A stretch of DNA of 64,000 nt from IMG/VR virus record IMGVR_UViG_3300020473_000013, positions 62,001 to 126,000 of that record. One strand, 5' to 3'. A program made the position numbers and the translations under genes. Below are positions 49,713-58,679 of this stretch, in pieces. The notes beneath the pieces are model-generated. The model ran no database searches. It was not told the origin of the DNA and saw nothing but the letters and a program-made list of their open reading frames with translations. The stretch's first letter is position 1. Each line of letters opens with the position of its first letter.

Positions 49713-51278
49713 CTAGAAGGTCAGGCCCGACTTCATCTTGTCGGGGTTCTTGAGGTAGGACTTGACGCGGTGCTCAGTGTCGCGAGCAGCACGATCACCA
49801 GGAGCTTCCTTGTCGACCTTGAGTTGCTTGATCTCAGCTTCGATGTCCTTGATCTTTTTCTTCAGGTCGGCAGCTTCCAGCTTGGCGAGCTTACGCACCT
49901 GACGGTTCAGAATGATGGTCGCGTCTTCCTTGGGCATCTTCATGCCTTTGGCGAGAGCAGCATCAGGGTCTTCGGAGACCAGAGCCTTGGGCAGCACCTT
50001 GAGCAGCTTCTCCATGTTCTCGACTGCGAACAGGTAAACTTTCTGGAGGTGCAACTCCTTCTCCGCTTTCTCCAGCAGGTGCTTGATGAGGCGGAGCTCC
50101 AGATTGATGCGATACTTGATCCACGTACGGAAGAACTTCTCGTAGTTCAGGTAGTGGAAGGCGTTCTTGTCGTTCGCCTTACGTACAGTCACGCCGAGGC
50201 GATACCCGACAGAGTTGGTGACCTGCTTTTCGACAGCCTCGTGGATGTCATAGAACTGGTCGGTGTCGAGGTTACGCTGGCACTCGATGATGAACAGAGC
50301 ACCGTAGGGGCCACTACCAACAGACTTCTTACCCTGCTTGCTGTAGCACTTCCGCACGCCGTCAATCTTGCTGATCTTCTCCAGAGTCTTGTCGATCTGG
50401 GCAGTAGATGCTAGGCCGGACGGGACGAAGGACCGCACACGGATCAGGCGCTTGTCGTAGTCCTCTTCGATCTCAGGCGCGTAGATGATACTGCCTTTAC
50501 CCGTCGCGATCATTTCCTCGAAGTCGGACGGATCGGTAACGCTTGTACATCCCCACGGATGCTGAATCTCCAAAACCTTCGCCAACTTCTTGCCAGACAT
50601 TTCCTTGCCCTTGAGCATGGCAATGACGACTTTCGATACGCTGCGGAAGGAGAAGCTCGGGTTACCAGCACGCACACCGTAGGCAGGAGCAGGCGTGTTA
50701 CCATTGAACAGCGCGTACGGCAGCAGGGCCGGCAGGAACAACGGAATGGAATCGTCGCCCGAGAAGTTCGGAACAGTCGGCACCACGTCGAGGTACGAAC
50801 GATCCAGCATGAACATGTGGGCGAACTTGCTCATGCGCGCCTCTGTGTAACGCTGAGCAGCAGCAGGGTTGATGGGCGTGCCCCAGTTACCCTGACCGTC
50901 TACCGCAGGAGGCATCGTGTTGGCGATGGTCACCATAGCACCGTAAGCGGCAGCGTCACCATGAGGGTGATACTTACCGATACAGTCGCCGACGGTACGT
51001 GCCGACTTCTTGTAAGATGAAGTCGGGCGCAGGTTCAGGCCTGCCAGTGACCAGAGCAGCGAACGATGCACGGGCTTGAGGCCGTCACGATAATCAGGAA
51101 CCGCGCGATCCTCAACGACGTATGCGCCGTAGTGGGAAAGAGCGTCGGACGTGAACGCCGACAGCTCGGTATCCTGTATGGTTTCCAGGTTCTGCCCGAG
51201 CATGGGAAACAGGCTGCGCTCGTCGCCCTTGATCGGAGCCGGCTTGCCGTTGCGGGTTGCTTTCTTCTTACGTGCCAT
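49713..51278 (-). CDS. gyrA: Type IIA DNA topoisomerase subunit A (GyrA/ParC-like, no C-terminal pinwheel)
   Basis: RAVPDYRDGLKPVHR, KSARTVG..IGKYHPHGD, GQGNWG, AAQRYTEAR active-site Tyr. Confidence 0.93.
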   Translation of the reverse strand: MARKKKATRNGKPAPIKGDERSLFPMLGQNLETIQDTELSAFTSDALSHYGAYVVEDRAVPDYRDGLKPVHRSLLWSLAGLNLRPTSSYKKSARTVGDCIGKYHPHGDAAAYGAMVTIANTMPPAVDGQGNWGTPINPAAAQRYTEARMSKFAHMFMLDRSYLDVVPTVPNFSGDDSIPLFLPALLPYALFNGNTPAPAYGVRAGNPSFSFRSVSKVVIAMLKGKEMSGKKLAKVLEIQHPWGCTSVTDPSDFEEMIATGKGSIIYAPEIEEDYDKRLIRVRSFVPSGLASTAQIDKTLEKISKIDGVRKCYSKQGKKSVGSGPYGALFIIECQRNLDTDQFYDIHEAVEKQVTNSVGYRLGVTVRKANDKNAFHYLNYEKFFRTWIKYRINLELRLIKHLLEKAEKELHLQKVYLFAVENMEKLLKVLPKALVSEDPDAALAKGMKMPKEDATIILNRQVRKLAKLEAADLKKKIKDIEAEIKQLKVDKEAPGDRAARDTEHRVKSYLKNPDKMKSGLTF

Positions 51279-51282
51279 GAGA

Positions 51283-51732
51283 TTACCTTACTCGACGAAC
51301 AGGGATGAAGATGGTGTTTGTGAAGGTGCCGATACCGTAGAGTTCAATGCACACACCGCCTGGAAGCGAATCGTCTTTGTGCACCGCCCCGTCGCCATCT
51401 TCCCCAGGGTTCAGGATGAGTTCTTTATGTTCGTAGGCGTAGCGATAGATGTCGGCAGGCAGACCATCGACCAGACGGTCCTTGTCGATGCGGACCACGA
51501 TCCCGTTTTCAAACTTCACGGCCTCTTGGTTCCAGTCACCGTTCAGGTCGACATTATACCATGCGGACTCATGGTCGCTCATGTCGTAGTCGAACTCCAG
51601 CGACACCTTCTCGTCAGGCTGATCGGTGCTAGCCCGGACAGCATCCACAAACTCTGCTAGCTCCTGGAACGTGGTGCCAGAGCGGTCCGTCTGAACGGAG
51701 AGCGTAACTTTGCCTTCGCGATTGCGTACCAT
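51283..51732 (-). CDS. Hypothetical acidic protein between topoisomerase subunits
   Basis: Tightly packed between gyrB and gyrA. Confidence 0.65.
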   Translation of the reverse strand: MVRNREGKVTLSVQTDRSGTTFQELAEFVDAVRASTDQPDEKVSLEFDYDMSDHESAWYNVDLNGDWNQEAVKFENGIVVRIDKDRLVDGLPADIYRYAYEHKELILNPGEDGDGAVHKDDSLPGGVCIELYGIGTFTNTIFIPVRRVR

Positions 51733-51734
51733 GA

Positions 51735-53783
51735 TCAGTCCTCCAGGCCAAGAAGCTGCCGGCGGTACATGGCGTTCTCTGCCACGACGCCGCGGAAGAA
51801 GCGCTCCTTCTCCGCACTCTCGAACGGATTGATGCGGATGAGGCGACGGGTGCTGGGCTTGAACGCGATGGGTTCGAGGAACGTCTCGTCTACCTCACCC
51901 CAACCCTTGATGCGCACGATCTCGCCGTCTTTCACTTTCTTGGGCGACTCCTTACGGCAAGCGTCGAACGTCATGCCTCCGTAAAGTTCGCCGTCCTTCA
52001 CTGCCGCGTACAGAGGTGCGTCGATGCACCACACGCGACCTTCCTTGTACAGGTCGGGCAACAGCCGGTAGATAGCGGCGAGGTACAGCACTGCGATGTG
52101 GCCCCCGTCAGGGTCAGGGTCGACCAACAGGATAACGTTCGCCGTGCGCAGCTTGCCTGTATCCAACGTCGGGTTCTCAGCCTTCGGGTCAAGCGTCTTC
52201 ACGTCGGCACCGAGGGCAGTCAACATCTTCTGAATTTCGGCGTGACCCAACACCTTGGACAGCGGAGCCTTGAGTGCGTTGAGTGGCTTACCGCCAGCAG
52301 GCAGCACTTCCTGGTAGTCAGAGTTGCGTGCGTCGATGGCGGTACCAGCGGCAGAGTCACCCTCCACGATGAACAGCTCGCGTTCGTGCGGCTTGGCCTT
52401 GTCGGCTACAGCCAGCTCGCCCGGCAGTGCGCTCCCCTTGGTCTTCTTCTTCACGTCAGCCATGGACTTGACGACAGCAGCCAGGTCCTCTCGTCCTTTA
52501 CCTACAGCCTGCGCACGCTTGATGATGTCGCGTGCCACCTTTTTGTTCTTGGAGAAATACTCCTCGAACGCAGGGAGCAACTCCTCGTAAACTTCTCGGT
52601 CGACCTTGGACGCCAGCTTGTCCTTCACCTGAGAAGTGTAGGCCGCGCCGTGCATACGGTAGTCGAACAGGCCTGTTAGACCGACGAGCAGATCACTACC
52701 CTTGAAGCCGAGAGACCGGCCCTTGCCTTTGCCCTTCGCTTTGGGCATGTAAGGCTTGACTGCTTGTACCAGAGCGTCGGTAAAGCCTTTGACGTGCCAA
52801 CCACCGTCAGCGGTCGGGCTGGTATTGACGAAACTGACGAAGTTGTCGGAGTCGGGATGATCAGACCAAACGACGGCGAGGCTGATGTGGTCGGACTTGT
52901 GCGTGAACGGCTTGCCCATAGGCTTGAGTTCGCGAGAATCGCACATGGTCTTGGGAATCCAAGCCAGGTCCTTCTTGTTATGGAAGGTGGCACCTTTCGT
53001 CTTGCCTTTGCGCACGACGGACAGCTTGATGACCAGGCCAGGGTTCAGGTTCGCCATGTACTTCAACCACTCAGCCACTTTCTTGGCATCGGGCTCAGCC
53101 TTGACGAAGTTCTTGGGCAGCTTGCGACCACGGCGTGATGACTCGGACACGACGGTCTGGTCGAGCTTGGACGCGATGATGGTACCGTACTTCTGAATCT
53201 TCTTATGGCTCAGCAACGCCGTCACGTCGCTGTCCACCTTCTTGACCTTTACTGGGTGGGGCCCCTTGGTCGCGATCTCGCCGCGCTCGAAGCGCTGGAA
53301 TGCGAGGCCGCCGTTGTACGTGGACCAGACGCGCATTTCCTCGCTCACCGCGTTAGCGGCAGCGACACCAACACCGTGTGTACCGGCACTGGTCTTGTAC
53401 GCCTTGTCGTTGAACTTGCCGCCTGCGTGTGTCTTGGTCAGGGCGGCTGTCATAATGGTGATCTTCTCCCCAGACTTCAACTTTTTGAAGTCGGTCGGAA
53501 TACCGCCGGCACCGTCAGCCACCACCATCAGGTCGTTGTCGTAGTCGAGCACCACCTCGATCAGGTTGTTGCGTCCAGCGACGTGCTCATCGTAGGAGTT
53601 ATCGACCTTCTCCTTTAGATGGCGGCGTGCCATTTCCTCACCCAGCTCGCCGAGGTACATGGAGGGATTGGCGCGCACACCATCCAAATTCTCTAGGATG
53701 GCAAATGAATCCTGAGCAAATGACTTCTTCTTACCTTTCTTACCAGAAGTCACGTCAACTTCCTTCACACCTTTTCTAGCCAT
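51735..53783 (-). CDS. gyrB: Type IIA DNA topoisomerase subunit B (GyrB/ParE-like)
   Basis: VR..P.MY.G, EKVDNSYDE, D.A.GIP, HAGGKF, GTHGVG, FIVEGDSA, LVDPDPDG, IKGWGE. Confidence 0.93.
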   Translation of the reverse strand: MARKGVKEVDVTSGKKGKKKSFAQDSFAILENLDGVRANPSMYLGELGEEMARRHLKEKVDNSYDEHVAGRNNLIEVVLDYDNDLMVVADGAGGIPTDFKKLKSGEKITIMTAALTKTHAGGKFNDKAYKTSAGTHGVGVAAANAVSEEMRVWSTYNGGLAFQRFERGEIATKGPHPVKVKKVDSDVTALLSHKKIQKYGTIIASKLDQTVVSESSRRGRKLPKNFVKAEPDAKKVAEWLKYMANLNPGLVIKLSVVRKGKTKGATFHNKKDLAWIPKTMCDSRELKPMGKPFTHKSDHISLAVVWSDHPDSDNFVSFVNTSPTADGGWHVKGFTDALVQAVKPYMPKAKGKGKGRSLGFKGSDLLVGLTGLFDYRMHGAAYTSQVKDKLASKVDREVYEELLPAFEEYFSKNKKVARDIIKRAQAVGKGREDLAAVVKSMADVKKKTKGSALPGELAVADKAKPHERELFIVEGDSAAGTAIDARNSDYQEVLPAGGKPLNALKAPLSKVLGHAEIQKMLTALGADVKTLDPKAENPTLDTGKLRTANVILLVDPDPDGGHIAVLYLAAIYRLLPDLYKEGRVWCIDAPLYAAVKDGELYGGMTFDACRKESPKKVKDGEIVRIKGWGEVDETFLEPIAFKPSTRRLIRINPFESAEKERFFRGVVAENAMYRRQLLGLED

Positions 53784-54850
53784 TATCCGGCCTCCAACTT
53801 AAAGTCACTTTTATTTACAGAGTTCTTCAATTCTTTCAGGGTCATCCAAGAAGCGACACCCTTCATACGATTGGTTCTGTCAGGCAGTACCTGTAAATTG
53901 CAAGGGTGCACCATAAAGCGGACGGGAATCACGGAAGGTCTGCGTTCGTACTCCATAGTATCGCGGTTCAGCCTAAAGTAGGCATCATGAACACTAACTA
54001 TGTGGTCGATGGACTCTCCGGGTCCTACATTAAGCACATGGGCGTAATGCGCAGGAAACCTCTTCATAGCGGAACGGGTCACCGTACTTATCAACCGGCG
54101 GTATTCCTTATACGTAAGGAGCGATGGGTCCAGGCTCAACTTATACGTCCAGGATTGCCGCGCGGCGTTTCTGTTCTGATTCACCTCACACGTTCTTCCC
54201 TTCGCTCGATTATCCTCTAGTAGGCTTACGGCTTCTTCGTGTGTACGAACACGGACACCATTAGCTCGGAGAAAATCTTTTAACGCACCTGAAGTTATGC
54301 GCATGTGAGGAAATTTTTTCCGAATGCCGTCAACGATATAAGAGGCGCTTCGCTTATCCTCGACGTACATACGACAGATGGAACTCTTGTTCCTGCGCAA
54401 AAAGGCTTGCTTCACCTGAGAACGCGACATCAAAGGAGTGCCGGCTCGATTACATGCAGTCTTAAAAGCCCAAACGCACATGTCGGTCGAATGTTTATGA
54501 GCTAGGCGTGAAGCCATTTTACCAGGGGAGACGAGCTTCTTATTCCATTCGATAATGGTGTCGCGCTCAGAAACAACGATGTCTATATGAGAGGCAGCCT
54601 TTTTCTTTTTACTGCGCATTAGATCGAAGTGGTGGAGGAGCTTTTGGAGGCTCCCGTGAGGTATTCCTGTCTCATTGGACAGTTCCCGCATGTTCAACCC
54701 CTTCACTTGGTAAAGGGATTTGAGCCAGTCGCGTATCTGAGGCGTGGGTTTGATTTGCCACTTACCGTTTTTCCGCTTTACGTAGGTGACGCCATCGACA
54801 AACTTTTCAGTCCCTGTTTTGGCGTCTTCTTTTATGTGTGTGTATCGCAC
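53783..54850 (-). CDS. Free-standing HNH homing endonuclease with N-terminal HTH-like repeats
   Basis: C-terminal ESIDHIVS...HPCNLQVL....NRMKG; HTH-like SLYQVKGLNMRELSNETGIPHGSLQKLL; atypical composition. Confidence 0.75.
   Translation of the reverse strand: MRYTHIKEDAKTGTEKFVDGVTYVKRKNGKWQIKPTPQIRDWLKSLYQVKGLNMRELSNETGIPHGSLQKLLHHFDLMRSKKKKAASHIDIVVSERDTIIEWNKKLVSPGKMASRLAHKHSTDMCVWAFKTACNRAGTPLMSRSQVKQAFLRRNKSSICRMYVEDKRSASYIVDGIRKKFPHMRITSGALKDFLRANGVRVRTHEEAVSLLEDNRAKGRTCEVNQNRNAARQSWTYKLSLDPSLLTYKEYRRLISTVTRSAMKRFPAHYAHVLNVGPGESIDHIVSVHDAYFRLNRDTMEYERRPSVIPVRFMVHPCNLQVLPDRTNRMKGVASWMTLKELKNSVNKSDFKLEAG
53812..53820 (-). promoter_or_regulatory. Putative phage-specific promoter CTGTAAATA inside the HNH gene 3' end
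   Basis: 29 bp upstream of the gyrB ATG. Confidence 0.55.
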
Positions 54851-54857
54851 GATGATC

Positions 54858-54903
54858 TCCCAGATACATAGCTTCGATATTCTAAATTAGTATGTATCTA
54901 GGA
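54858..54903 (-). promoter_or_regulatory. RBS-sequestering hairpin of the HNH gene
   Basis: 13-bp stem TCCTAGATACATA/TATGTATCTGGGA (one G-U) covering GGGA of the SD before the GTG at 54850. Confidence 0.65.
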
Positions 54904-54910
54904 TTTGTAC

Positions 54911-55018
54911 CTAGGCAAGTCCTTCCATAATCTCGAAGCCGTCCTGCCGTGCAGACTTCTTGCGTTTTTTCTTCGGGGCGGAAGACACGTCCACCTCGGT
55001 CACCTTCTTCTTTGCCAT
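54911..55018 (-). pseudogene. Stranded 5' fragment of gyrB (35 aa)
   Basis: MAKKKVTEVDVSSAPKKKRKKSARQDGFEIMEGLA* aligns with GyrB MARKGVKEVDVTSGKKGKKKSFAQDSFAILENL; has own RBS GGAGG and GTGTAAATA (55052-55060). Confidence 0.8.
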
Positions 55019-55077
55019 GATCGTGTAGCCTGTGTTGGAGGTATCAGTGACTATTTACACAATACCTTCTCGGTACA

Positions 55078-55106
55078 ATAAACAAAGACGGGGGCCGGAG
55101 CCCCCA
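55078..55106 (-). terminator. Rho-independent terminator
   Basis: GGGGGC-TCCG-GCCCCC then GTCTTTGTTT. Confidence 0.65.
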
Positions 55107-55112
55107 TCGGAT

Positions 55113-55427
55113 TCAAACTTTTTCGATGCCATCGAAGTACATGGTCAGCAATTCCTCTGCGCCGACCATATAATGGTATTCAAGATACCGACGCAAGACT
55201 TCTTCCTCACCATAAAGGGTGATGTTAGAGTTGCCTCCCGCGGGACCGATAAACTCGTTCATTTCCAGACCGATACCATGACTGAGGAGAATATCGTAAA
55301 GCTCTTTGGCGTCAGCGTTGGACAGGTCGAACGACCCATCTTCTGCCATGCCGTCCACAGCGAAGTCGATATCGGAAAGTTTGCACGGGCCGCGAACGTC
55401 GAGAGTAGCGAAAGTCATGTTGGTCAC
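55113..55427 (-). CDS. Hypothetical protein
   Basis: ORF with RBS AAGG. Confidence 0.6.
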   Translation of the reverse strand: MTNMTFATLDVRGPCKLSDIDFAVDGMAEDGSFDLSNADAKELYDILLSHGIGLEMNEFIGPAGGNSNITLYGEEEVLRRYLEYHYMVGAEELLTMYFDGIEKV

Positions 55428-55491
55428 CTTGTAGATCGTGTTGGAAGTCGGAGATAAAGATGGAGGGCCCGAAGACCCTCCCTGCCGTCAG

Positions 55492-55863
55492 TTACTCGCA
55501 GTACGTCTTGAGAAGTTCGACGAAGTTGGCGAGCGTTTCGTCAGGCAAGCCTCTCTGGTCATAAGCGTTGAACCATTGCTCAGCCAGCTCGCCAAACTTT
55601 TTGTTGACGACTTCCTCAGATTCCTCGTCCAGAATGAACGGGTCGATCGAGGTGCCCGTCTGCTTTGCAATGTCAGGGAAGATCACATCCTCCACAAACT
55701 CTCGGATGAAGCGGTACGCGGCTTTGGGCGCTTCGCCCGTGCAGATGATCTTACTATCCGAAAGGGCCAGCGCGATGATGGCCGGTTCTTTGTAGGCATC
55801 CCCTTCGAGCAGGGCGAACAGATTTTCTCGGGTAGCAAACTTTTGATTAGGGAAACGCGGCAT
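55492..55863 (-). CDS. Hypothetical protein
   Basis: Start moved to MPRFPN (RBS AAGGA) downstream of a cassette. Confidence 0.6.
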   Translation of the reverse strand: MPRFPNQKFATRENLFALLEGDAYKEPAIIALALSDSKIICTGEAPKAAYRFIREFVEDVIFPDIAKQTGTSIDPFILDEESEEVVNKKFGELAEQWFNAYDQRGLPDETLANFVELLKTYCE

Positions 55864-55909
55864 GATGTGATTCCTTACAGTGAGCGCGATTGCGCTAGTT
55901 GAATGATGG

Positions 55910-55984
55910 CGAACGTTATCAATCTCCGTCACCACATTGTCGAACGCTCGTTTCGGATCGCTAGCGTTCATCTTCATTATATCA
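55910..55984 (-). promoter_or_regulatory. Promoter/leader cassette: TGaTATAAT, 41 bp, TGGTGACGG-N7-TAACGTTCG
   Basis: Read directly. Confidence 0.75.
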
Positions 55985-56021
55985 CACCACGGCACGGCGA
56001 ACAAGGTAGGTCTCTATCTGG

Positions 56022-56606
56022 TCACCGCTCGATGTCGAACGTCTCACCAGCGTATGCTGCGTAGGATGCAAACTTTGCCAGATTGAGTTGCGCCAGCAGA
56101 TCGGTCAGCTTTACCCAGTTCCCCTCAGAACCGCCTATAACGATGTCTGCTAACCAGCGACCGTACTTACCGCTTCCGTTCTTACGGGTTAGAAGGATGA
56201 CCTCGCGATCCGTCAGGAGTGTCCGAACAAACCGTGAGGCCATAACACCGTGAGCTTCCTCGGCAGAGTTCTCTGCTCGCCACGTCGGCTCTGGAGTGTC
56301 GAAAGCCAGTAAGCGGAACGTCACGTTGACCGTCACGTTGAAGCCCAACTCGACGGCAGCCTCAAAGGTATCGCCGTCGATCACCCGTGTGACCTCAGCG
56401 CGGTAGATATAAAGTTGGTCTGTATCGAAGCTAAGAGTATCGCTGATCCTGCTGAACTCCAGCTCACTGGACTCGTACCACATATTGAGAATCTGGTCGC
56501 GAGTATAGGAGGTGGAGCACTGCCCGCACGTCTGAGTGTCGGCGGGCAGCGGGAACCAAGCGATGTCCTCTCCGCAGTTGGCACAGGGAGATTTCATCTT
56601 GTCCAT
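56022..56606 (-). CDS. Thermonuclease (SNase-like) with N-terminal zinc ribbon
   Basis: YRAEVTRVIDGDT, RLLAFDTPE, GKYGRWLADI; CxxC...CxxC N-terminus. Confidence 0.85.
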   Translation of the reverse strand: MDKMKSPCANCGEDIAWFPLPADTQTCGQCSTSYTRDQILNMWYESSELEFSRISDTLSFDTDQLYIYRAEVTRVIDGDTFEAAVELGFNVTVNVTFRLLAFDTPEPTWRAENSAEEAHGVMASRFVRTLLTDREVILLTRKNGSGKYGRWLADIVIGGSEGNWVKLTDLLAQLNLAKFASYAAYAGETFDIER

Positions 56607-57083: not shown

Positions 57084-57563
57084 TTAGGAGTCGTCTTCAT
57101 CGGAGTCAGCATCGGCGTCATCATCGGCGTCTGCGTCATCGCCAGAAGACTCATCATCGGAATCAGGGTCGGCATCATCGCCGTCACCATCATCGGAATC
57201 ATCAGAGGCATCATCGGTGCCAGTATCGGAGCCATCGTCATCACCTTCGTCTGAGGCATTGTCGTCAGAATCATCGCCGCCGTCTTCGGAGGAATCTTCA
57301 TCAGAACTATCCTCGTCCGAGGAGTCATCGGACGAGTCTTCGCTGTCCTCAGAATCGCCGTCGTCCGAGGAGTCTTTCTTGGCCTTTTTCTTGGCCTTTT
57401 CTTCCTTCTCCTTGCGCTCCTCCTCCCGTTCTTCCTTCTTCTCCTCTTCCTCTTCCGCATCGGAAGGCTGAGTCTGAGGGACGGTGCCTTGGTCCATGAA
57501 ACCATAAAAGCTGGCGAGAGCCTTATCGCTATCACTCACCATGGTTAGATCAATCTCGATCAT
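57084..57563 (-). CDS. Acidic D/S/E-rich low-complexity protein
   Basis: RBS GGAGG; E/K block followed by a long D/S tail. Confidence 0.65.
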   Translation of the reverse strand: MIEIDLTMVSDSDKALASFYGFMDQGTVPQTQPSDAEEEEEKKEEREEERKEKEEKAKKKAKKDSSDDGDSEDSEDSSDDSSDEDSSDEDSSEDGGDDSDDNASDEGDDDGSDTGTDDASDDSDDGDGDDADPDSDDESSGDDADADDDADADSDEDDS

Positions 57564-57573
57564 GGCCTGCCTC

Positions 57574-58644
57574 CTAGTTGATATTGATTGCGTCGATGAG
57601 GTGCTGGCGGTCCTGCTCGTCCGAGGGAAAGTCCTTGGTATGTTTCTTCAACGCCTTTCGGAGTTTCTTCTCGTTAAAGCATACATCCAACATCGGGCAT
57701 TCCGTGTAATACGCAATCTCCTTCTCGTAGAAGGCCAGCGTCTTGCACGGCTTATACTTGATCGCCTCCGCAGGGTTCATCTTGGCGAAGCTGTTAACTC
57801 CTGCCTTGAACTTGAGGCGTTCGTTGGCGACCATCTCCTTACAACGGCGATCCCAGTTCTTGGTCCAAGTCTCCGCGTGTTCGTAGTAGTTGAACGGGTT
57901 ATCGCGGCTGAAATACAGGAGGCTAAATCCAGCAATCTCCATCTTGTACTTCTTCTTCAGGACCCAGCAGTAGGACGGCAACTGTTTGAGGTGAGACTTT
58001 TGCGGGAGCTTGTTGCTATCGATCTTGGTTTTGGTGCAGGTCTTGTAGTCCGCAACCCAGTACCGACCGTCAGGCAGCTCAATAATACAGTCGATATGGC
58101 CTTTGAGGCCTTTGTAGTTGATCTCCTTCTCCACATACTCCATAGCATTACCGCACTTGGGGCATGTGTTGTTCGTCGTATTCTTTCGGGTTAGCTTACC
58201 TTCCCGGACCAGTTCGCCATTCGCGTCGTACAAATCGAGAGCGCGTTGGCCCTTCCGACACGCACGGTCGAGGCACTTCCAGTCGCCGAAAATCTTACCA
58301 GAGAAGCCCATGTGATACTGAATGTTCTCGTGGGCTGTTGTGCCGACAGAGGTGAAATAGTCACCTGCCGCGGAACGCTCGTTCTCAAAATAGCCGAGCG
58401 ATGCTCCCCGTACCAGCTTCATGTAGACCAGAACGCTACACAACGGGAACGAGGAGGGCCTGTATTCGGGGCGGCGACCTTTCTGACTTTTGAACTTGTT
58501 TTCCATGGCCTGCTCGTAGAGCTTACCAGCGATGGAGGCCGCTTTCGATTTTCTAGGAGGAAAGCCACCCTTGCGGAAGGTCTGCTTCCGCGGTACGTTT
58601 CCGAAGCCTGCCATAGGGTGCATCCTTTGTTCAGTATGTGGCAT
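57574..58644 (-). CDS. Cas4/RecB-like PD-(D/E)xK exonuclease
   Basis: RPSSFPLC, GTTAH, GHIDCI...VADYKT, QLPSY, C-terminal C..C..C Fe-S-type cysteines; true start may be 58623 or 58614. Confidence 0.75.
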   Translation of the reverse strand: MPHTEQRMHPMAGFGNVPRKQTFRKGGFPPRKSKAASIAGKLYEQAMENKFKSQKGRRPEYRPSSFPLCSVLVYMKLVRGASLGYFENERSAAGDYFTSVGTTAHENIQYHMGFSGKIFGDWKCLDRACRKGQRALDLYDANGELVREGKLTRKNTTNNTCPKCGNAMEYVEKEINYKGLKGHIDCIIELPDGRYWVADYKTCTKTKIDSNKLPQKSHLKQLPSYCWVLKKKYKMEIAGFSLLYFSRDNPFNYYEHAETWTKNWDRRCKEMVANERLKFKAGVNSFAKMNPAEAIKYKPCKTLAFYEKEIAYYTECPMLDVCFNEKKLRKALKKHTKDFPSDEQDRQHLIDAININ

Positions 58645-58679
58645 ATTTACACCGACTTATATACGCGGCAGTGTAAATA
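58644..58679. promoter_or_regulatory. Divergent pair of GTGTAAATA motifs
   Basis: Minus-strand copy 58644-58652 toward the exonuclease, plus-strand copy 58671-58679 toward the primase. Confidence 0.6.

What the first reader, a model, noticed from the sequence alone, without database searches (positions are those of the whole stretch)
53685..55060. HNH cassette that displaced the gyrB start and supplied a replacement N-terminus
Seen: a 35-codon orphan at 54911..55018 (MAKKKVTEVDVSSAPKKKRKKSARQDGFEIMEGLA*) has its own promoter motif and RBS. It aligns with the first 33 residues of GyrB (MARKGVKEVDVTSGKKGKKKSFAQDSFAILENL) and is separated from gyrB by a 355-aa HNH gene. The orphan uses genome-typical codons (AAG, GTG, GAC). 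The current gyrB start uses AT-rich codons (TCA TTT GCT...CTA GAG AAT TTG) like the HNH gene, and a promoter motif (53812-53820) sits inside the HNH 3' end. Established: phage topoisomerase genes are HEG targets (T4 mobA between genes 39 and 60). Inference: intron-less invasion of a coding sequence made harmless by carrying a recoded, cleavage-resistant gene start. Alternative: the junctions ...GGACTT| and ...TTG|GAT fit group I U/omega-G rules and would splice in frame, but no intron core is visible.
Basis: partly seen in the sequence, partly recalled or inferred. Interest (0 to 1): 0.8.

Follow-up and report, generated by a model that had tools for sequence, protein, structure and literature searches.

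The report
Homing-endonuclease cassette that replaces gyrB's start
A mobile endonuclease gene has landed inside the 5' end of a marine jumbo phage's topoisomerase (gyrB-like) gene and keeps it working by bringing its own promoter, ribosome-binding site and first 38 codons; an otherwise identical phage allele without the insert shows exactly what was replaced.

Summary

**Layout on the minus strand**
- A 35-codon orphan lies at 55018..54911.
- A 355-aa HTH + HNH-like ORF lies at 54850..53783.
- An intact 682-aa gyrB-like gene lies at 53783..51735.

**Decisive evidence**
- An endonuclease-free allele of the same phage exists (contig L040, protein P0072, 683 aa; also a contig in DNA run X7).
- It is 100% identical to the window over 3,469 nt downstream and has only 2 mismatches in 449 nt upstream.
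- In it the orphan is simply the start of gyrB (…EIMEGLAGVRHNPSMYLG…).
- So 1,247 nt (54917..53671) replaced 15 nt.

**Cassette contents**
- A hairpin that covers the endonuclease's ribosome-binding site.
- The endonuclease ORF.
- A TGTAAATA promoter motif inside that ORF's 3' end.
- A GGAGG ribosome-binding site.
- Diverged gyrB codons 1-38, with GC3 0.42 against 0.76 for the rest of the gene.

**Endonuclease family**
- It is unannotated.
- It abuts a gyrB start in all eight independent contexts examined.
- It is absent from most relatives.

- The right junction lies 14 nt further into gyrB than stated.
- Pfam does not recognise the HNH domain.
- Nothing supports an intron.

Cleavage, and resistance of the new start to cleavage, are inferred. 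The closest precedent is the T4-type MobA element in the same gene family. I rate this a new variant of a known kind.

The parts
55087..55108 (-). Intrinsic-terminator-like hairpin plus T-run that ends the upstream 104-aa gene. It marks the start of the native gyrB transcription unit.
   Evidence: The same sequence is present in the HEG-free allele L040.
55052..55059 (-). Native gyrB promoter motif TGTAAATA. It now drives the orphan and probably the endonuclease gene.
   Evidence: 10 copies against 0.38 expected, mostly at a consistent distance from start codons. The same motif lies upstream of gyrB in the HEG-free L040 and L002.
54911..55018 (-). Orphan ORF: native gyrB codons 1-34, then one codon and a TAG stop supplied at the cassette's left edge.
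   Evidence: It is identical to the start of the HEG-free GyrB P0072 on L040 except for 2 synonymous changes at 54923 and 54917. GC3 is 0.72.
53671..54917 (-). The 1,247-nt tract that is absent from the HEG-free allele, where 15 nt (GGCGGGCGTCCGTCA on the gene strand) stand instead. This is the mobile cassette plus the co-converted gyrB 5' end.
   Evidence: a contig in run X7 skips 53671-54917 with 15 letters between; L040 alignment.
54859..54915 (-). Hairpin at the cassette's left end. The 5' arms CCTAGGTAC (54915..54907) and CCTAGATAC (54902..54894) pair with GTATCTGGG (54867..54859). The 3' arm ends 8 nt before the GTG start and covers the GGG of the GGGAG ribosome-binding site.
   Evidence: -20.2 kcal/mol, z -2.5; 9/9 pairs in 7 loci, with 4 different arm sequences that change on both sides.
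53783..54850 (-). 355-aa putative homing endonuclease: N-terminal HTH repeats plus a C-terminal HNH-like (beta-beta-alpha-metal) domain, with D282, H283, H315, N318, N327 and K330 invariant in the family.
53812..53819 (-). TGTAAATA promoter motif embedded in the 3' end of the endonuclease ORF, 28 nt upstream of the gyrB ATG.
   Evidence: The tail of the ORF that encodes it is conserved in homologue P0002.
53791..53795 (-). GGAGG ribosome-binding site for the replacement gyrB start.
   Evidence: Read directly from the sequence.
53671..53783 (-). Cassette-borne replacement gyrB codons 1-38 (MARKGVKEVDVTSGKKGKKKSFAQDSFAILENLDGVRA).
   Evidence: GC3 0.42. 59% amino-acid and 58% nucleotide identity to the native start. 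It shares SFxILENLDGVRANP with the HNH-linked gyrB of L035/L039.
51735..53670 (-). Resident part of the gyrB-like topoisomerase II large-subunit gene (codon 39 to the stop), 100% identical to the HEG-free allele.

Best explanation
**What it is.** A free-standing homing-endonuclease element sits inside the 5' end of the phage's gyrB-like gene. It carries everything needed to restart that gene.

**What is shown.**
1. Two alleles of one marine jumbo phage exist, and they differ only here.
2. The empty allele has one continuous gyrB that begins with the 'orphan' sequence.
3. The filled allele has 1,247 nt in place of 15 nt at codons 34-39.
4. The insert holds, in order:
   - a stop codon;
   - a conserved hairpin over the endonuclease's ribosome-binding site;
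   - the HTH + HNH-like ORF;
   - a phage promoter motif inside that ORF's 3' end;
   - a strong ribosome-binding site;
   - a diverged copy of gyrB codons 1-38, fused in frame to the resident gene.
5. The endonuclease family sits at the start of a gyrB in every context seen.
6. It is absent from most related phages.

**What is inferred.**
1. In a mixed infection, the enzyme cuts or nicks endonuclease-free gyrB near codons 34-39. This is the conserved …EGLxGxRxNP… stretch of the N-terminal arm.
2. Repair copies the cassette from the donor.
   - The right crossover falls just after codon 38.
   - The left crossover falls inside the orphan.
   - The only two upstream differences lie within 7 nt of the cassette edge. 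This implies the donor already carried the orphan-plus-cassette arrangement.
3. The filled allele is immune for two reasons.
   - The old site is broken in two.
   - The new copy differs at many positions (SFAQDSFAILENLDGVRA against SARQDGFEIMEGLAGVRH).
4. The old gyrB promoter now transcribes the orphan and the endonuclease gene, whose translation the hairpin limits. GyrB is made from the cassette's own promoter and start.
For: **HEG-free allele**
- a contig in DNA run X7 joins 54918 to 53670 through 15 other letters. X7 depth is zero over 53706-54911 while the flanks are covered.
- P0072 (683 aa) on L040.
- 3,469 nt downstream at 100% identity, and 449 nt upstream with 2 mismatches, both in the last 7 nt.

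**Foreign composition**
-.

**Single N-terminus in HEG-free relatives**
- L002, and 26 of 28 other IMG/VR gyrB loci, lack the HNH gene.

**Family always at a gyrB start**
- Window.
- L031.
- L035, L036, L037.
- L039.
- BcepSaruman_171.
- L042-44.
- L008.

**Catalytic motif and model**
- Motif invariant across 28 and 23 sequences.
- High-confidence beta-beta-alpha model.
- The best PDB fold hits are Cas9 HNH domains.

**Regulatory features**
- Hairpin with changes on both sides of the stem.
- Promoter motif statistics.

**Precedents**
- PMC2988022: promoters embedded in seg/mob ORFs, co-conversion.
- bioRxiv 10.1101/2022.08.31.505936: the MobA element deletes part of the topoisomerase gene and carries a homologous replacement region.
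Against: - No enzymatic evidence exists. Pfam HNH models do not hit, and PDB fold hits are not significant (E 0.36-5).
- The cleavage site and the immunity of the new start are inferred only.
- 'ILENL' also occurs in a HEG-free gyrB (L038). So not every unusual residue need be an immunity change.
- The HEG-free allele rests on one assembled contig plus one Logan contig, which may come from the same sample.
- RNA-library contigs cannot prove which start is used. They may contain DNA.
- The strict linkage to gyrB could also fit a non-mobile accessory gene.
Confidence: 0.8

Rival explanations
1. The 1.2-kb insert is a self-splicing (group I) intron with an HNH ORF. The orphan is exon 1 and is spliced in frame to GAT at codon 34.
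For: - The junctions …CTT| and …TTG| would join in frame.
- Differences in flanking exons next to an insertion are also typical of intron homing (PMC2988022).
Against: - No Rfam family matches, even at E up to 10.
- Only about 64 nt 5' and about 100 nt 3' of the insert lie outside the ORF.
- The 3' part is a promoter motif, a GGAGG site, an ATG and 33 codons homologous to gyrB.
- The same endonuclease family sits upstream of an uninterrupted gyrB, with no exon-1 remnant, in L031, L037, L039, L008 and BcepSaruman.
- RNA-library contigs cross both junctions unspliced, and no joint is seen in the RNA runs.
Confidence: 0.03
2. The HTH + HNH-like protein is not a mobile endonuclease. It is a dedicated accessory or regulatory partner of the phage topoisomerase. 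The presence/absence polymorphism arose by ordinary recombination between phages.
For: - It is always adjacent to gyrB and translationally overlaps it.
- Pfam finds no HNH domain.
- No cleavage data exist.
Against: - Its distribution is patchy: it is absent from 26 of 28 related gyrB loci and from all but one of 50,697 phage records.
- The filled and empty alleles have identical flanks and short conversion tracts.
- The invariant residues match the catalytic D-H…N triad of HNH nucleases.
- The composition is foreign.
- Insertion into a coding sequence at the cost of an orphan is not what an accessory gene would be expected to do.
Confidence: 0.1
3. A local tandem duplication of the gyrB 5' end arose in this genome, and an endonuclease gene later inserted between the two copies. 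Alternatively, the empty allele arose from the filled one by deletion.
For: Two homologous 5' ends lie in direct orientation.
Against: - The two copies are only 58% identical in DNA, with GC3 of 0.42 against 0.72, while the flanks of the two alleles are identical.
- The empty allele's GCG GGC GTC CGT CAC cannot be assembled from either copy in the filled allele. Deletion by recombination between the copies is therefore excluded.
Confidence: 0.04

Closest known systems
MobA element of T4-type phages (HNH homing endonuclease plus gene 60 bypass cassette in the topoisomerase II large-subunit gene)
   Same: - It targets the same gene family (phage type IIA topoisomerase large subunit).
- It is an HNH-type free-standing endonuclease inserted inside the ORF without an intron or intein.
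- Insertion deletes a few tens of nt of the target and replaces them with a diverged homologous region carried by the element.
- Near-identical genomes exist with and without the element.
- The element protects the filled allele from re-cutting.
- Sources: bioRxiv 10.1101/2022.08.31.505936; PMC2988022.
   Different: - MobA inserts in the Toprim domain and splits the protein into two functional polypeptides with added tails and a 50-nt translational bypass. Here the insertion is at codons 34-39.
- Here the upstream piece is discarded as a 35-codon orphan, and the element supplies a promoter, ribosome-binding site, start codon and the whole N-terminal arm.
- Domain order differs: MobA has an N-terminal HNH domain, while this protein has N-terminal HTH repeats and a C-terminal HNH-like domain. 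The MobA order is from PMC2988022. The two sequences were not compared directly.
Intron-less homing of T4 seg/mob endonucleases (SegF, SegG, MobE)
   Same: - A free-standing endonuclease gene lies next to the conserved gene it targets.
- Flanking sequence is co-converted.
- Promoters for the downstream gene are embedded in the endonuclease ORF.
- Endonuclease translation is limited by RNA structure or overlap.
- Source: PMC2988022.
   Different: Those elements normally lie between genes. Here the element lies within the coding sequence and leaves a truncated remnant of the gene start.
mobE insertion that splits nrdA in Aeromonas phage Aeh1
   Same: An HNH endonuclease gene is inserted inside an essential ORF without a splicing element, and the gene stays functional (PMC2988022).
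   Different: In Aeh1 both fragments are needed and assemble into the enzyme. Here the 5' fragment is made redundant by a duplicate.
Group I intron or intein homing
   Same: Insertion at a conserved site inside a gene disrupts the recognition site, so the filled allele is immune.
   Different: There is no splicing at the RNA or protein level. Function is restored by re-initiating transcription and translation.

Membership tests
HNH (beta-beta-alpha-metal) nuclease superfamily | Conserved His (often D-H) at the end of strand 1, Asn at strand 2, and a metal-binding His or Asn on the following helix | tested here: met
   - D282-H283, H315-P-x-N318-L and N327-x-x-K330 are invariant in 28 and 23 homologues.
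- In the model (pLDDT 95.8) DH ends a strand, N318 starts the next strand and N327 lies on the following helix.
HNH (beta-beta-alpha-metal) nuclease superfamily | Significant match to curated HNH profiles or to solved HNH structures | tested here: inconclusive
   - Pfam gives no hit at its threshold. HNH_3 (E 0.36) and HNH (E 1.7) each match one member only.
- PHROG 'endonuclease VII' and 'HNH endonuclease' match at E about 1e-3.
- Five of the eight best PDB Foldseek hits are Cas9 HNH domains, but E is 0.36-4.2 and TM below 0.3.
- BFVD gives DUF7487 and uncharacterised phage proteins at E of 2e-4 to 1e-2, and HNHc proteins at E of 0.03 or above.
Free-standing homing endonuclease gene (mobile element) | Presence/absence polymorphism at one site between otherwise near-identical genomes | tested here: met
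   L040 against the window: 100% identity over 3,469 nt and 99.6% over 449 nt on either side of the 1,247-nt difference. The X7 contig shows the same junction.
Free-standing homing endonuclease gene (mobile element) | Co-conversion of flanking target sequence with the endonuclease gene | tested here: met
   - Right side: codons 1-38 are replaced by donor-type sequence up to 53671.
- Left side: the only two upstream mismatches lie 2 and 8 nt from the cassette edge.
Free-standing homing endonuclease gene (mobile element) | Patchy distribution among relatives and a constant genomic target | tested here: met
   The gene is present at a gyrB start in 8 independent contexts. It is absent from 26 of 28 other gyrB loci and from all cultured phages except BcepSaruman.
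Free-standing homing endonuclease gene (mobile element) | Site-specific cleavage of the empty allele, resistance of the filled allele, and biased inheritance in mixed infection | not testable with these tools
   Needs protein expression with cleavage mapping, or phage crosses.
Group I intron | Conserved catalytic RNA core (P3-P9) and spliced transcripts | tested here: not met
   - There is no Rfam match at E up to 10.
- The sequence outside the ORF is too short and is homologous to the gyrB promoter and start.
- No joint is seen in the RNA-library contigs. Contig-level data are weak evidence for absence.
MobA-type topoisomerase element | Insertion in the Toprim domain, conserved C- and N-terminal extensions and a translational bypass cassette | tested here: not met
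   The insertion is at codons 34-39, far from Toprim (residues 469-585). Both ORFs read normally and there is no bypass. It works like MobA in carrying a homologous replacement region, but it is not a member.

The most novel reading that the evidence does not exclude
This is a distinct, recurrent way for a homing endonuclease to live inside an essential gene, alongside introns, inteins, split-gene tails and translational bypass. I call it a 'gene-start replacement' module. It carries a promoter, a ribosome-binding site and a diverged N-terminal arm that is immune to cleavage. It takes over the displaced native promoter for its own hairpin-limited expression. It spreads as a unit among marine and soil jumbo phages, with L036 apparently a second intragenic case at another codon. 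A further possibility is that swapping the GyrB N-terminal arm, which in bacterial GyrB contacts the partner's ATP site (my own knowledge), changes enzyme properties and is itself selected.
Probability: 0.45. Interest if true: 0.7.

Novelty: new variant of a known kind. Interest (0 to 1): 0.62.

Why it matters
- **A different solution to a known problem.** An endonuclease gene that lands in an essential ORF must keep that ORF working. Here it neither splices nor splits the protein. It discards the old start and brings a new one, complete with a promoter.
- **A clean natural experiment.** The filled and empty alleles are otherwise identical. They define the element's ends, the conversion tracts and a 15-nt window for the cleavage site. 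The enzyme's target can therefore be tested directly.
- **A new family to annotate.** The work identifies an unannotated endonuclease family (HTH repeats plus a divergent HNH-like domain) that is specific to the gyrB 5' end of jumbo phages. It includes BcepSaruman_171, currently 'hypothetical protein'.
- **A caution for annotators.** Short orphan ORFs with good promoters next to mobile endonuclease genes can be relics of displaced gene starts.

Tried and rejected
- **Rfam scan** of 53300-55400 at E up to 10 gave only chance-level hits and no intron family.
- **Pfam** on the whole protein, on 28 family members and on 23 C-terminal domains found HTH families in the N-terminal half but no significant HNH match.
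- **Foldseek with the full-length model** against PDB was meaningless, because the model is an elongated multi-domain protein with pTM 0.56. I repeated it with the C-terminal domain alone.
- **Metagenome-contig scan** with the endonuclease alignment returned only the source phage.
- **Viral-contig scan for the endonuclease** returned only the source contig.
- **Exact search for the empty-allele junction** in viral contigs found nothing. The empty allele was found instead through the 90%-identity protein cluster of GyrB.
- **Search for the donor of the new N-terminus** in the 5.8-billion-protein set found no close match. The nearest sequences were L038 (no HNH) and L039 (HNH-linked), so the donor stays unknown.
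- **'ILENL' as a pure immunity signature** was rejected as a strict rule, because HEG-free L038 also has VLENL.
- **The L036 upstream ORF as a second orphan** is only suggestive. Its last 18-23 residues resemble gyrB Lys-rich tails at about 61% identity, but E is about 4.


Full report
**1. What is in the sequence**

On the minus strand the region reads as follows.
- A terminator-like hairpin at 55108..55087.
- TGTAAATA at 55059..55052.
- A 35-codon ORF at 55018..54911 (MAKKKVTEVDVSSAPKKKRKKSARQDGFEIMEGLA*).
- A 60-nt spacer.
- A 355-aa ORF at 54850..53783 with a GTG start.
- A 682-aa ORF at 53783..51735, overlapping the previous ORF as TAATG.

The neighbouring genes are these.
- The 682-aa protein has Pfam DNA_gyraseB and Toprim domains. 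The gene after next (51278..49713) has the GyrA/ParC domain. This is a phage type IIA topoisomerase.
- A 149-aa ORF lies between the two subunit genes.

The source is a 224,853-bp IMG/VR contig from a Tara Oceans marine metagenome. It is distantly related to the PaBG, Lu11 and Erwinia jumbo phages.

**2.

- The orphan and the first 33-38 GyrB residues align at 59% protein and 58% DNA identity.
- GC3 values are as follows.
  - Orphan: 0.72.
  - gyrB codons 1-33: 0.42.
  - Rest of gyrB: 0.76.
  - gyrA: 0.73.
  - Endonuclease ORF: 0.54.
  - No other 33-codon block in gyrB or gyrA falls below 0.55.
- GC content dips to 0.40-0.50 between about 53700 and 55000.
- TGTAAATA behaves as a real phage promoter-type motif.
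  - It occurs 10 times in the window against 0.38 expected.
  - Nine copies are on the minus strand.
  - Eight of the ten lie 26-44 nt upstream of a start codon.
- One copy precedes the orphan. Another lies inside the 3' end of the endonuclease ORF, 28 nt before the gyrB ATG, which also has a GGAGG ribosome-binding site.

**3. The decisive evidence: an empty allele**

- *First sighting.* I laid public runs on 52500-56500.
  - A contig in DNA run X7 runs from 55131 to 54918, then has 15 other letters, then continues at 53670.
  - X7 has no depth over 53706-54911, although its flanks are covered.
- *Assembled contig.* The 90%-identity cluster of the window's GyrB contains a 683-aa member, P0072. 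It lies on a 3,930-bp Tara contig, L040.
- *Alignment*.
  - L040 462-3930 matches window 53670..50202 with no mismatch in 3,469 nt.
  - L040 1-449 matches window 55363..54915 with two mismatches, at 54923 and 54917.
- *Reading frame.*
  - The empty allele reads …GAG ATT ATG GAG GGA CTG GCG GGC GTC CGT CAC AAT CCC…, which is …EIMEGLAGVRHNPSMYLG….
  - The orphan is therefore the true original start of gyrB.
  - The filled allele has 1,247 nt (54917..53671) where the empty one has 15 nt.
- *Direction of the event.* The empty allele cannot be derived from the filled one by deletion. Its GCG GGC GTC CGT CAC differs from both copies in the filled allele.
- *Caveat.* X7 and L040 may come from the same sample, so I count them as one observation seen in two assemblies.

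**4. Boundaries**

- *Right.*
- Donor-type sequence runs through codon 38 (…ENL DGVRA).
  - Everything downstream is identical between the two alleles.
- *Left.*
  - The cassette proper begins with CCTAGGTAC at 54915. This is a motif found at the left end of all related cassettes (see section 6).
- *The donor already had the orphan.*
  - The only two upstream differences between the alleles are synonymous (GAG to GAA, CTG to CTT). They lie 8 and 2 nt from that edge.
  - By my arithmetic the chance of both falling in the last 9 of 449 nt is about 4e-4.
  - I read this as a short left-hand conversion tract.
  - It implies that the donor already carried a gyrB remnant (…GAA GGA CTT G) next to the cassette. 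So the orphan-plus-cassette arrangement was copied in by two-sided homologous repair and was not created in this genome.

**5. The endonuclease**

- *Size of the family.*
  - Sequence searches find few relatives. Two are close (57% and 54% identity).
  - A profile search of 1.84 billion representatives gives 67 proteins at E up to 1e-3.
- *Domains.*
  - Pfam does not recognise an HNH domain.
  - The N-terminal two-thirds consists of helix-turn-helix repeats.
  - The C-terminal domain has invariant D-H, H-P-x-N-L and N-x-x-K.
- *Structure.*
  - A high-confidence model (pLDDT 95.8) puts DH at the end of a strand, the first Asn at the next strand and the second Asn on the following helix. This is the beta-beta-alpha-metal layout.
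  - The best PDB fold matches are Cas9 HNH domains, but they are not significant.
  - In BFVD the domain matches the BcepSaruman homologue, DUF7487 proteins and, more weakly, HNHc proteins.
- *Verdict.* I call it a probable divergent HNH-superfamily nuclease. All invariant residues are intact in the window's copy.

**6. The family is tied to the start of gyrB and is patchy**

In every locus where neighbouring sequence is available, the ORF ends at or overlaps the start codon of a gyrB-like gene.

| Context |
|---|
| Window |
| L031 |
| L035 / L039 |
| L036 |
| L037 |
| L008 |
| L042-44 |
| Burkholderia phage BcepSaruman, gene 171, annotated 'hypothetical protein' |

- *Distribution.*
  - The gene is missing from 26 of 28 other gyrB loci retrieved from IMG/VR, including the closest relative L002 at 81% GyrB identity.
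  - It is also missing from all but one of 50,697 deposited phage genomes.
- *Position in other lineages.*
  - In L031, L037, L039, L008 and BcepSaruman the gene lies upstream of an intact gyrB with no orphan.
  - The intergenic position therefore appears to be the usual one, and the window's intragenic position a derived one.
  - L036 may be a second intragenic case. The ORF upstream of the endonuclease ends …KKETKAKKKSAS*, and gyrB restarts VAVKKSASQDGF with different codons. The statistical support is weak.
- *Sequence that travels with the endonuclease.*
  - The HNH-linked gyrB genes of the window and of L035/L039 share SFxILENLDGVRANP, although their endonucleases are only about 36% identical.
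  - HEG-free genes mostly have DGFxIxEGL.
  - This fits a 5' segment that moves with the endonuclease.
  - HEG-free L038 has VLENL, so this signature is not exclusive.

**7. Regulatory anatomy**

- *Hairpin.*
  - All cassettes begin with a stem CCYARRTAC … GTAYYTRGG.
  - It forms 9 of 9 pairs in seven loci, with four different arm sequences, including changes on both sides.
  - The 3' arm ends 6-8 nt before the start codon in six of the seven loci. In L037 it is an inner stem, 21 nt upstream. It covers the G-rich ribosome-binding site.
  - Folding energies beat shuffled controls, with z from -2.5 to -4.7.
- *Precedents from T4* (PMC2988022).
  - Occlusion of the ribosome-binding site.
  - Promoters for the downstream gene embedded in the endonuclease ORF.
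  - GUG starts.
- *Inferred consequences here.*
  - The displaced native promoter transcribes the orphan and the endonuclease.
  - The hairpin limits endonuclease translation.
  - gyrB is expressed from the cassette's internal promoter and GGAGG site, and possibly also by coupling at TAATG.

**8. Mechanism**

- *Shown.* The structure, the two alleles, the conversion tracts and the family's site specificity.
- *Inferred.* This is homing by double-strand-break repair.
  - The enzyme cuts or nicks empty gyrB near codons 34-39. In bacterial GyrB this stretch is part of the conserved N-terminal arm preceding G-x-R-x-x-P-x-M-Y-L/I-G (my own knowledge, not tested here).
  - The 15-nt gap and the flanking tracts mark resection and repair from a filled donor.
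  - The filled allele escapes re-cutting because the old site is interrupted and the new copy differs at many positions.
- *Origin of the first composite.* It probably arose when an intergenic cassette moved into a phage whose upstream region lacked homology, so the left end was joined illegitimately inside gyrB.
- *Donor.*
  - The first 21 codons of the replacement start resemble those of L002 (MARKGVKEVDVT against MARKKGVQEVDVT). This places the donor in the same clade.
  - The donor itself was not found.

**9. Rival explanations**

- *Group I intron.*
  - There is no RNA-family match.
  - Too little of the insert lies outside the ORF, and what there is consists of a promoter plus a homologous coding start.
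  - The family occurs upstream of uninterrupted genes.
  - RNA-library contigs cross both junctions without joints. Contigs are weak evidence for absence.
- *Accessory gene rather than mobile element.* This is not formally excluded without biochemistry. It fits poorly with the patchy distribution, the identical flanks and the foreign composition.
- *Local duplication, or deletion of the cassette.* Both are excluded by the divergence of the two copies and by the sequence of the empty allele.

**10. Comparison with what is known**

- *Closest precedent.* The MobA element of T4-type phages (bioRxiv 10.1101/2022.08.31.505936; PMC2988022).
  - It also sits inside the topoisomerase II large-subunit gene.
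  - It deletes 55-75 nt and carries a diverged homologous replacement region.
  - It occurs next to near-identical empty genomes.
- *Differences.*
  - MobA splits the protein into two working halves and needs a 50-nt translational bypass.
  - The present element makes the 5' fragment redundant by supplying a complete new transcription and translation start and N-terminal arm.
  - It uses a different endonuclease architecture.
  - It fails the MobA membership features of Toprim insertion site, terminal extensions and bypass.
- *Verdict.* This is a new variant of a known kind: intron-less homing into a coding sequence. It involves a previously unannotated endonuclease family, and the filled and empty alleles are unusually cleanly resolved.

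Noticed in passing
window 51283-51732 (-): A 149-aa ORF with no Pfam or PHROG match lies between gyrB and gyrA in the window and in the HEG-free allele L040. In L002, L038 and BcepSaruman gyrB is followed directly by gyrA. This looks like another lineage-specific insert between the topoisomerase subunit genes.
   Followed up: partly
window, 10 sites (9258, 20090, 37440, 41305, 43659, 53812, 55052, 58644, 58672, 61113): TGTAAATA occurs 10 times against 0.38 expected, 9 times on the minus strand, and mostly 26-44 nt upstream of start codons. A divergent pair lies at 58644-58679. It is probably this phage's promoter consensus. The motif also stands upstream of gyrB in L002 and L038.
   Followed up: partly
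window 54158: A contig from RNA-library run X3 (record 12, depth 8.2) lacks one G inside the endonuclease ORF. That would shift the frame ahead of the catalytic domain. It is either a decaying endonuclease variant in that sample or an assembly error.
   Followed up: no
window 56022-56606 (-): A 194-aa protein has a staphylococcal-nuclease-like domain (PHROG 452 'endonuclease', E 4e-23; faint Pfam SNase) preceded by CxxC pairs. It is conserved in L002.
   Followed up: no
window 57084-57563 (-): A 159-aa ORF is extremely rich in Asp, Glu and Ser (long runs of SDD/EE). Overlapping ORFs in other frames come from the same repetitive DNA.
   Followed up: no
L031 721-736 and 1785-1800: The 16-mer ACTGTAAAGCATAGTA occurs twice in L031. 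One copy is in the hairpin loop upstream of the endonuclease gene. The other is inside its 3' end, upstream of gyrB. This suggests that a host-specific promoter flanks the cassette on both sides.
   Followed up: no
L036 200-345 and 1297-1340: The ORF upstream of the endonuclease ends …KKETKAKKKSAS*, and gyrB restarts at GTG as VAVKKSASQDGF with different codons for KKSAS. This is probably a second intragenic insertion with a duplicated, recoded segment, at a codon about 13 upstream of the window's site. The contig is too short to be sure.
   Followed up: partly
L045 (MK552140.1 98193-99101): Burkholderia phage BcepSaruman gene 171, annotated 'hypothetical protein', belongs to this endonuclease family and overlaps the start of its GyrB-like gene. 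It is a culturable system in which homing could be tested.
   Followed up: partly
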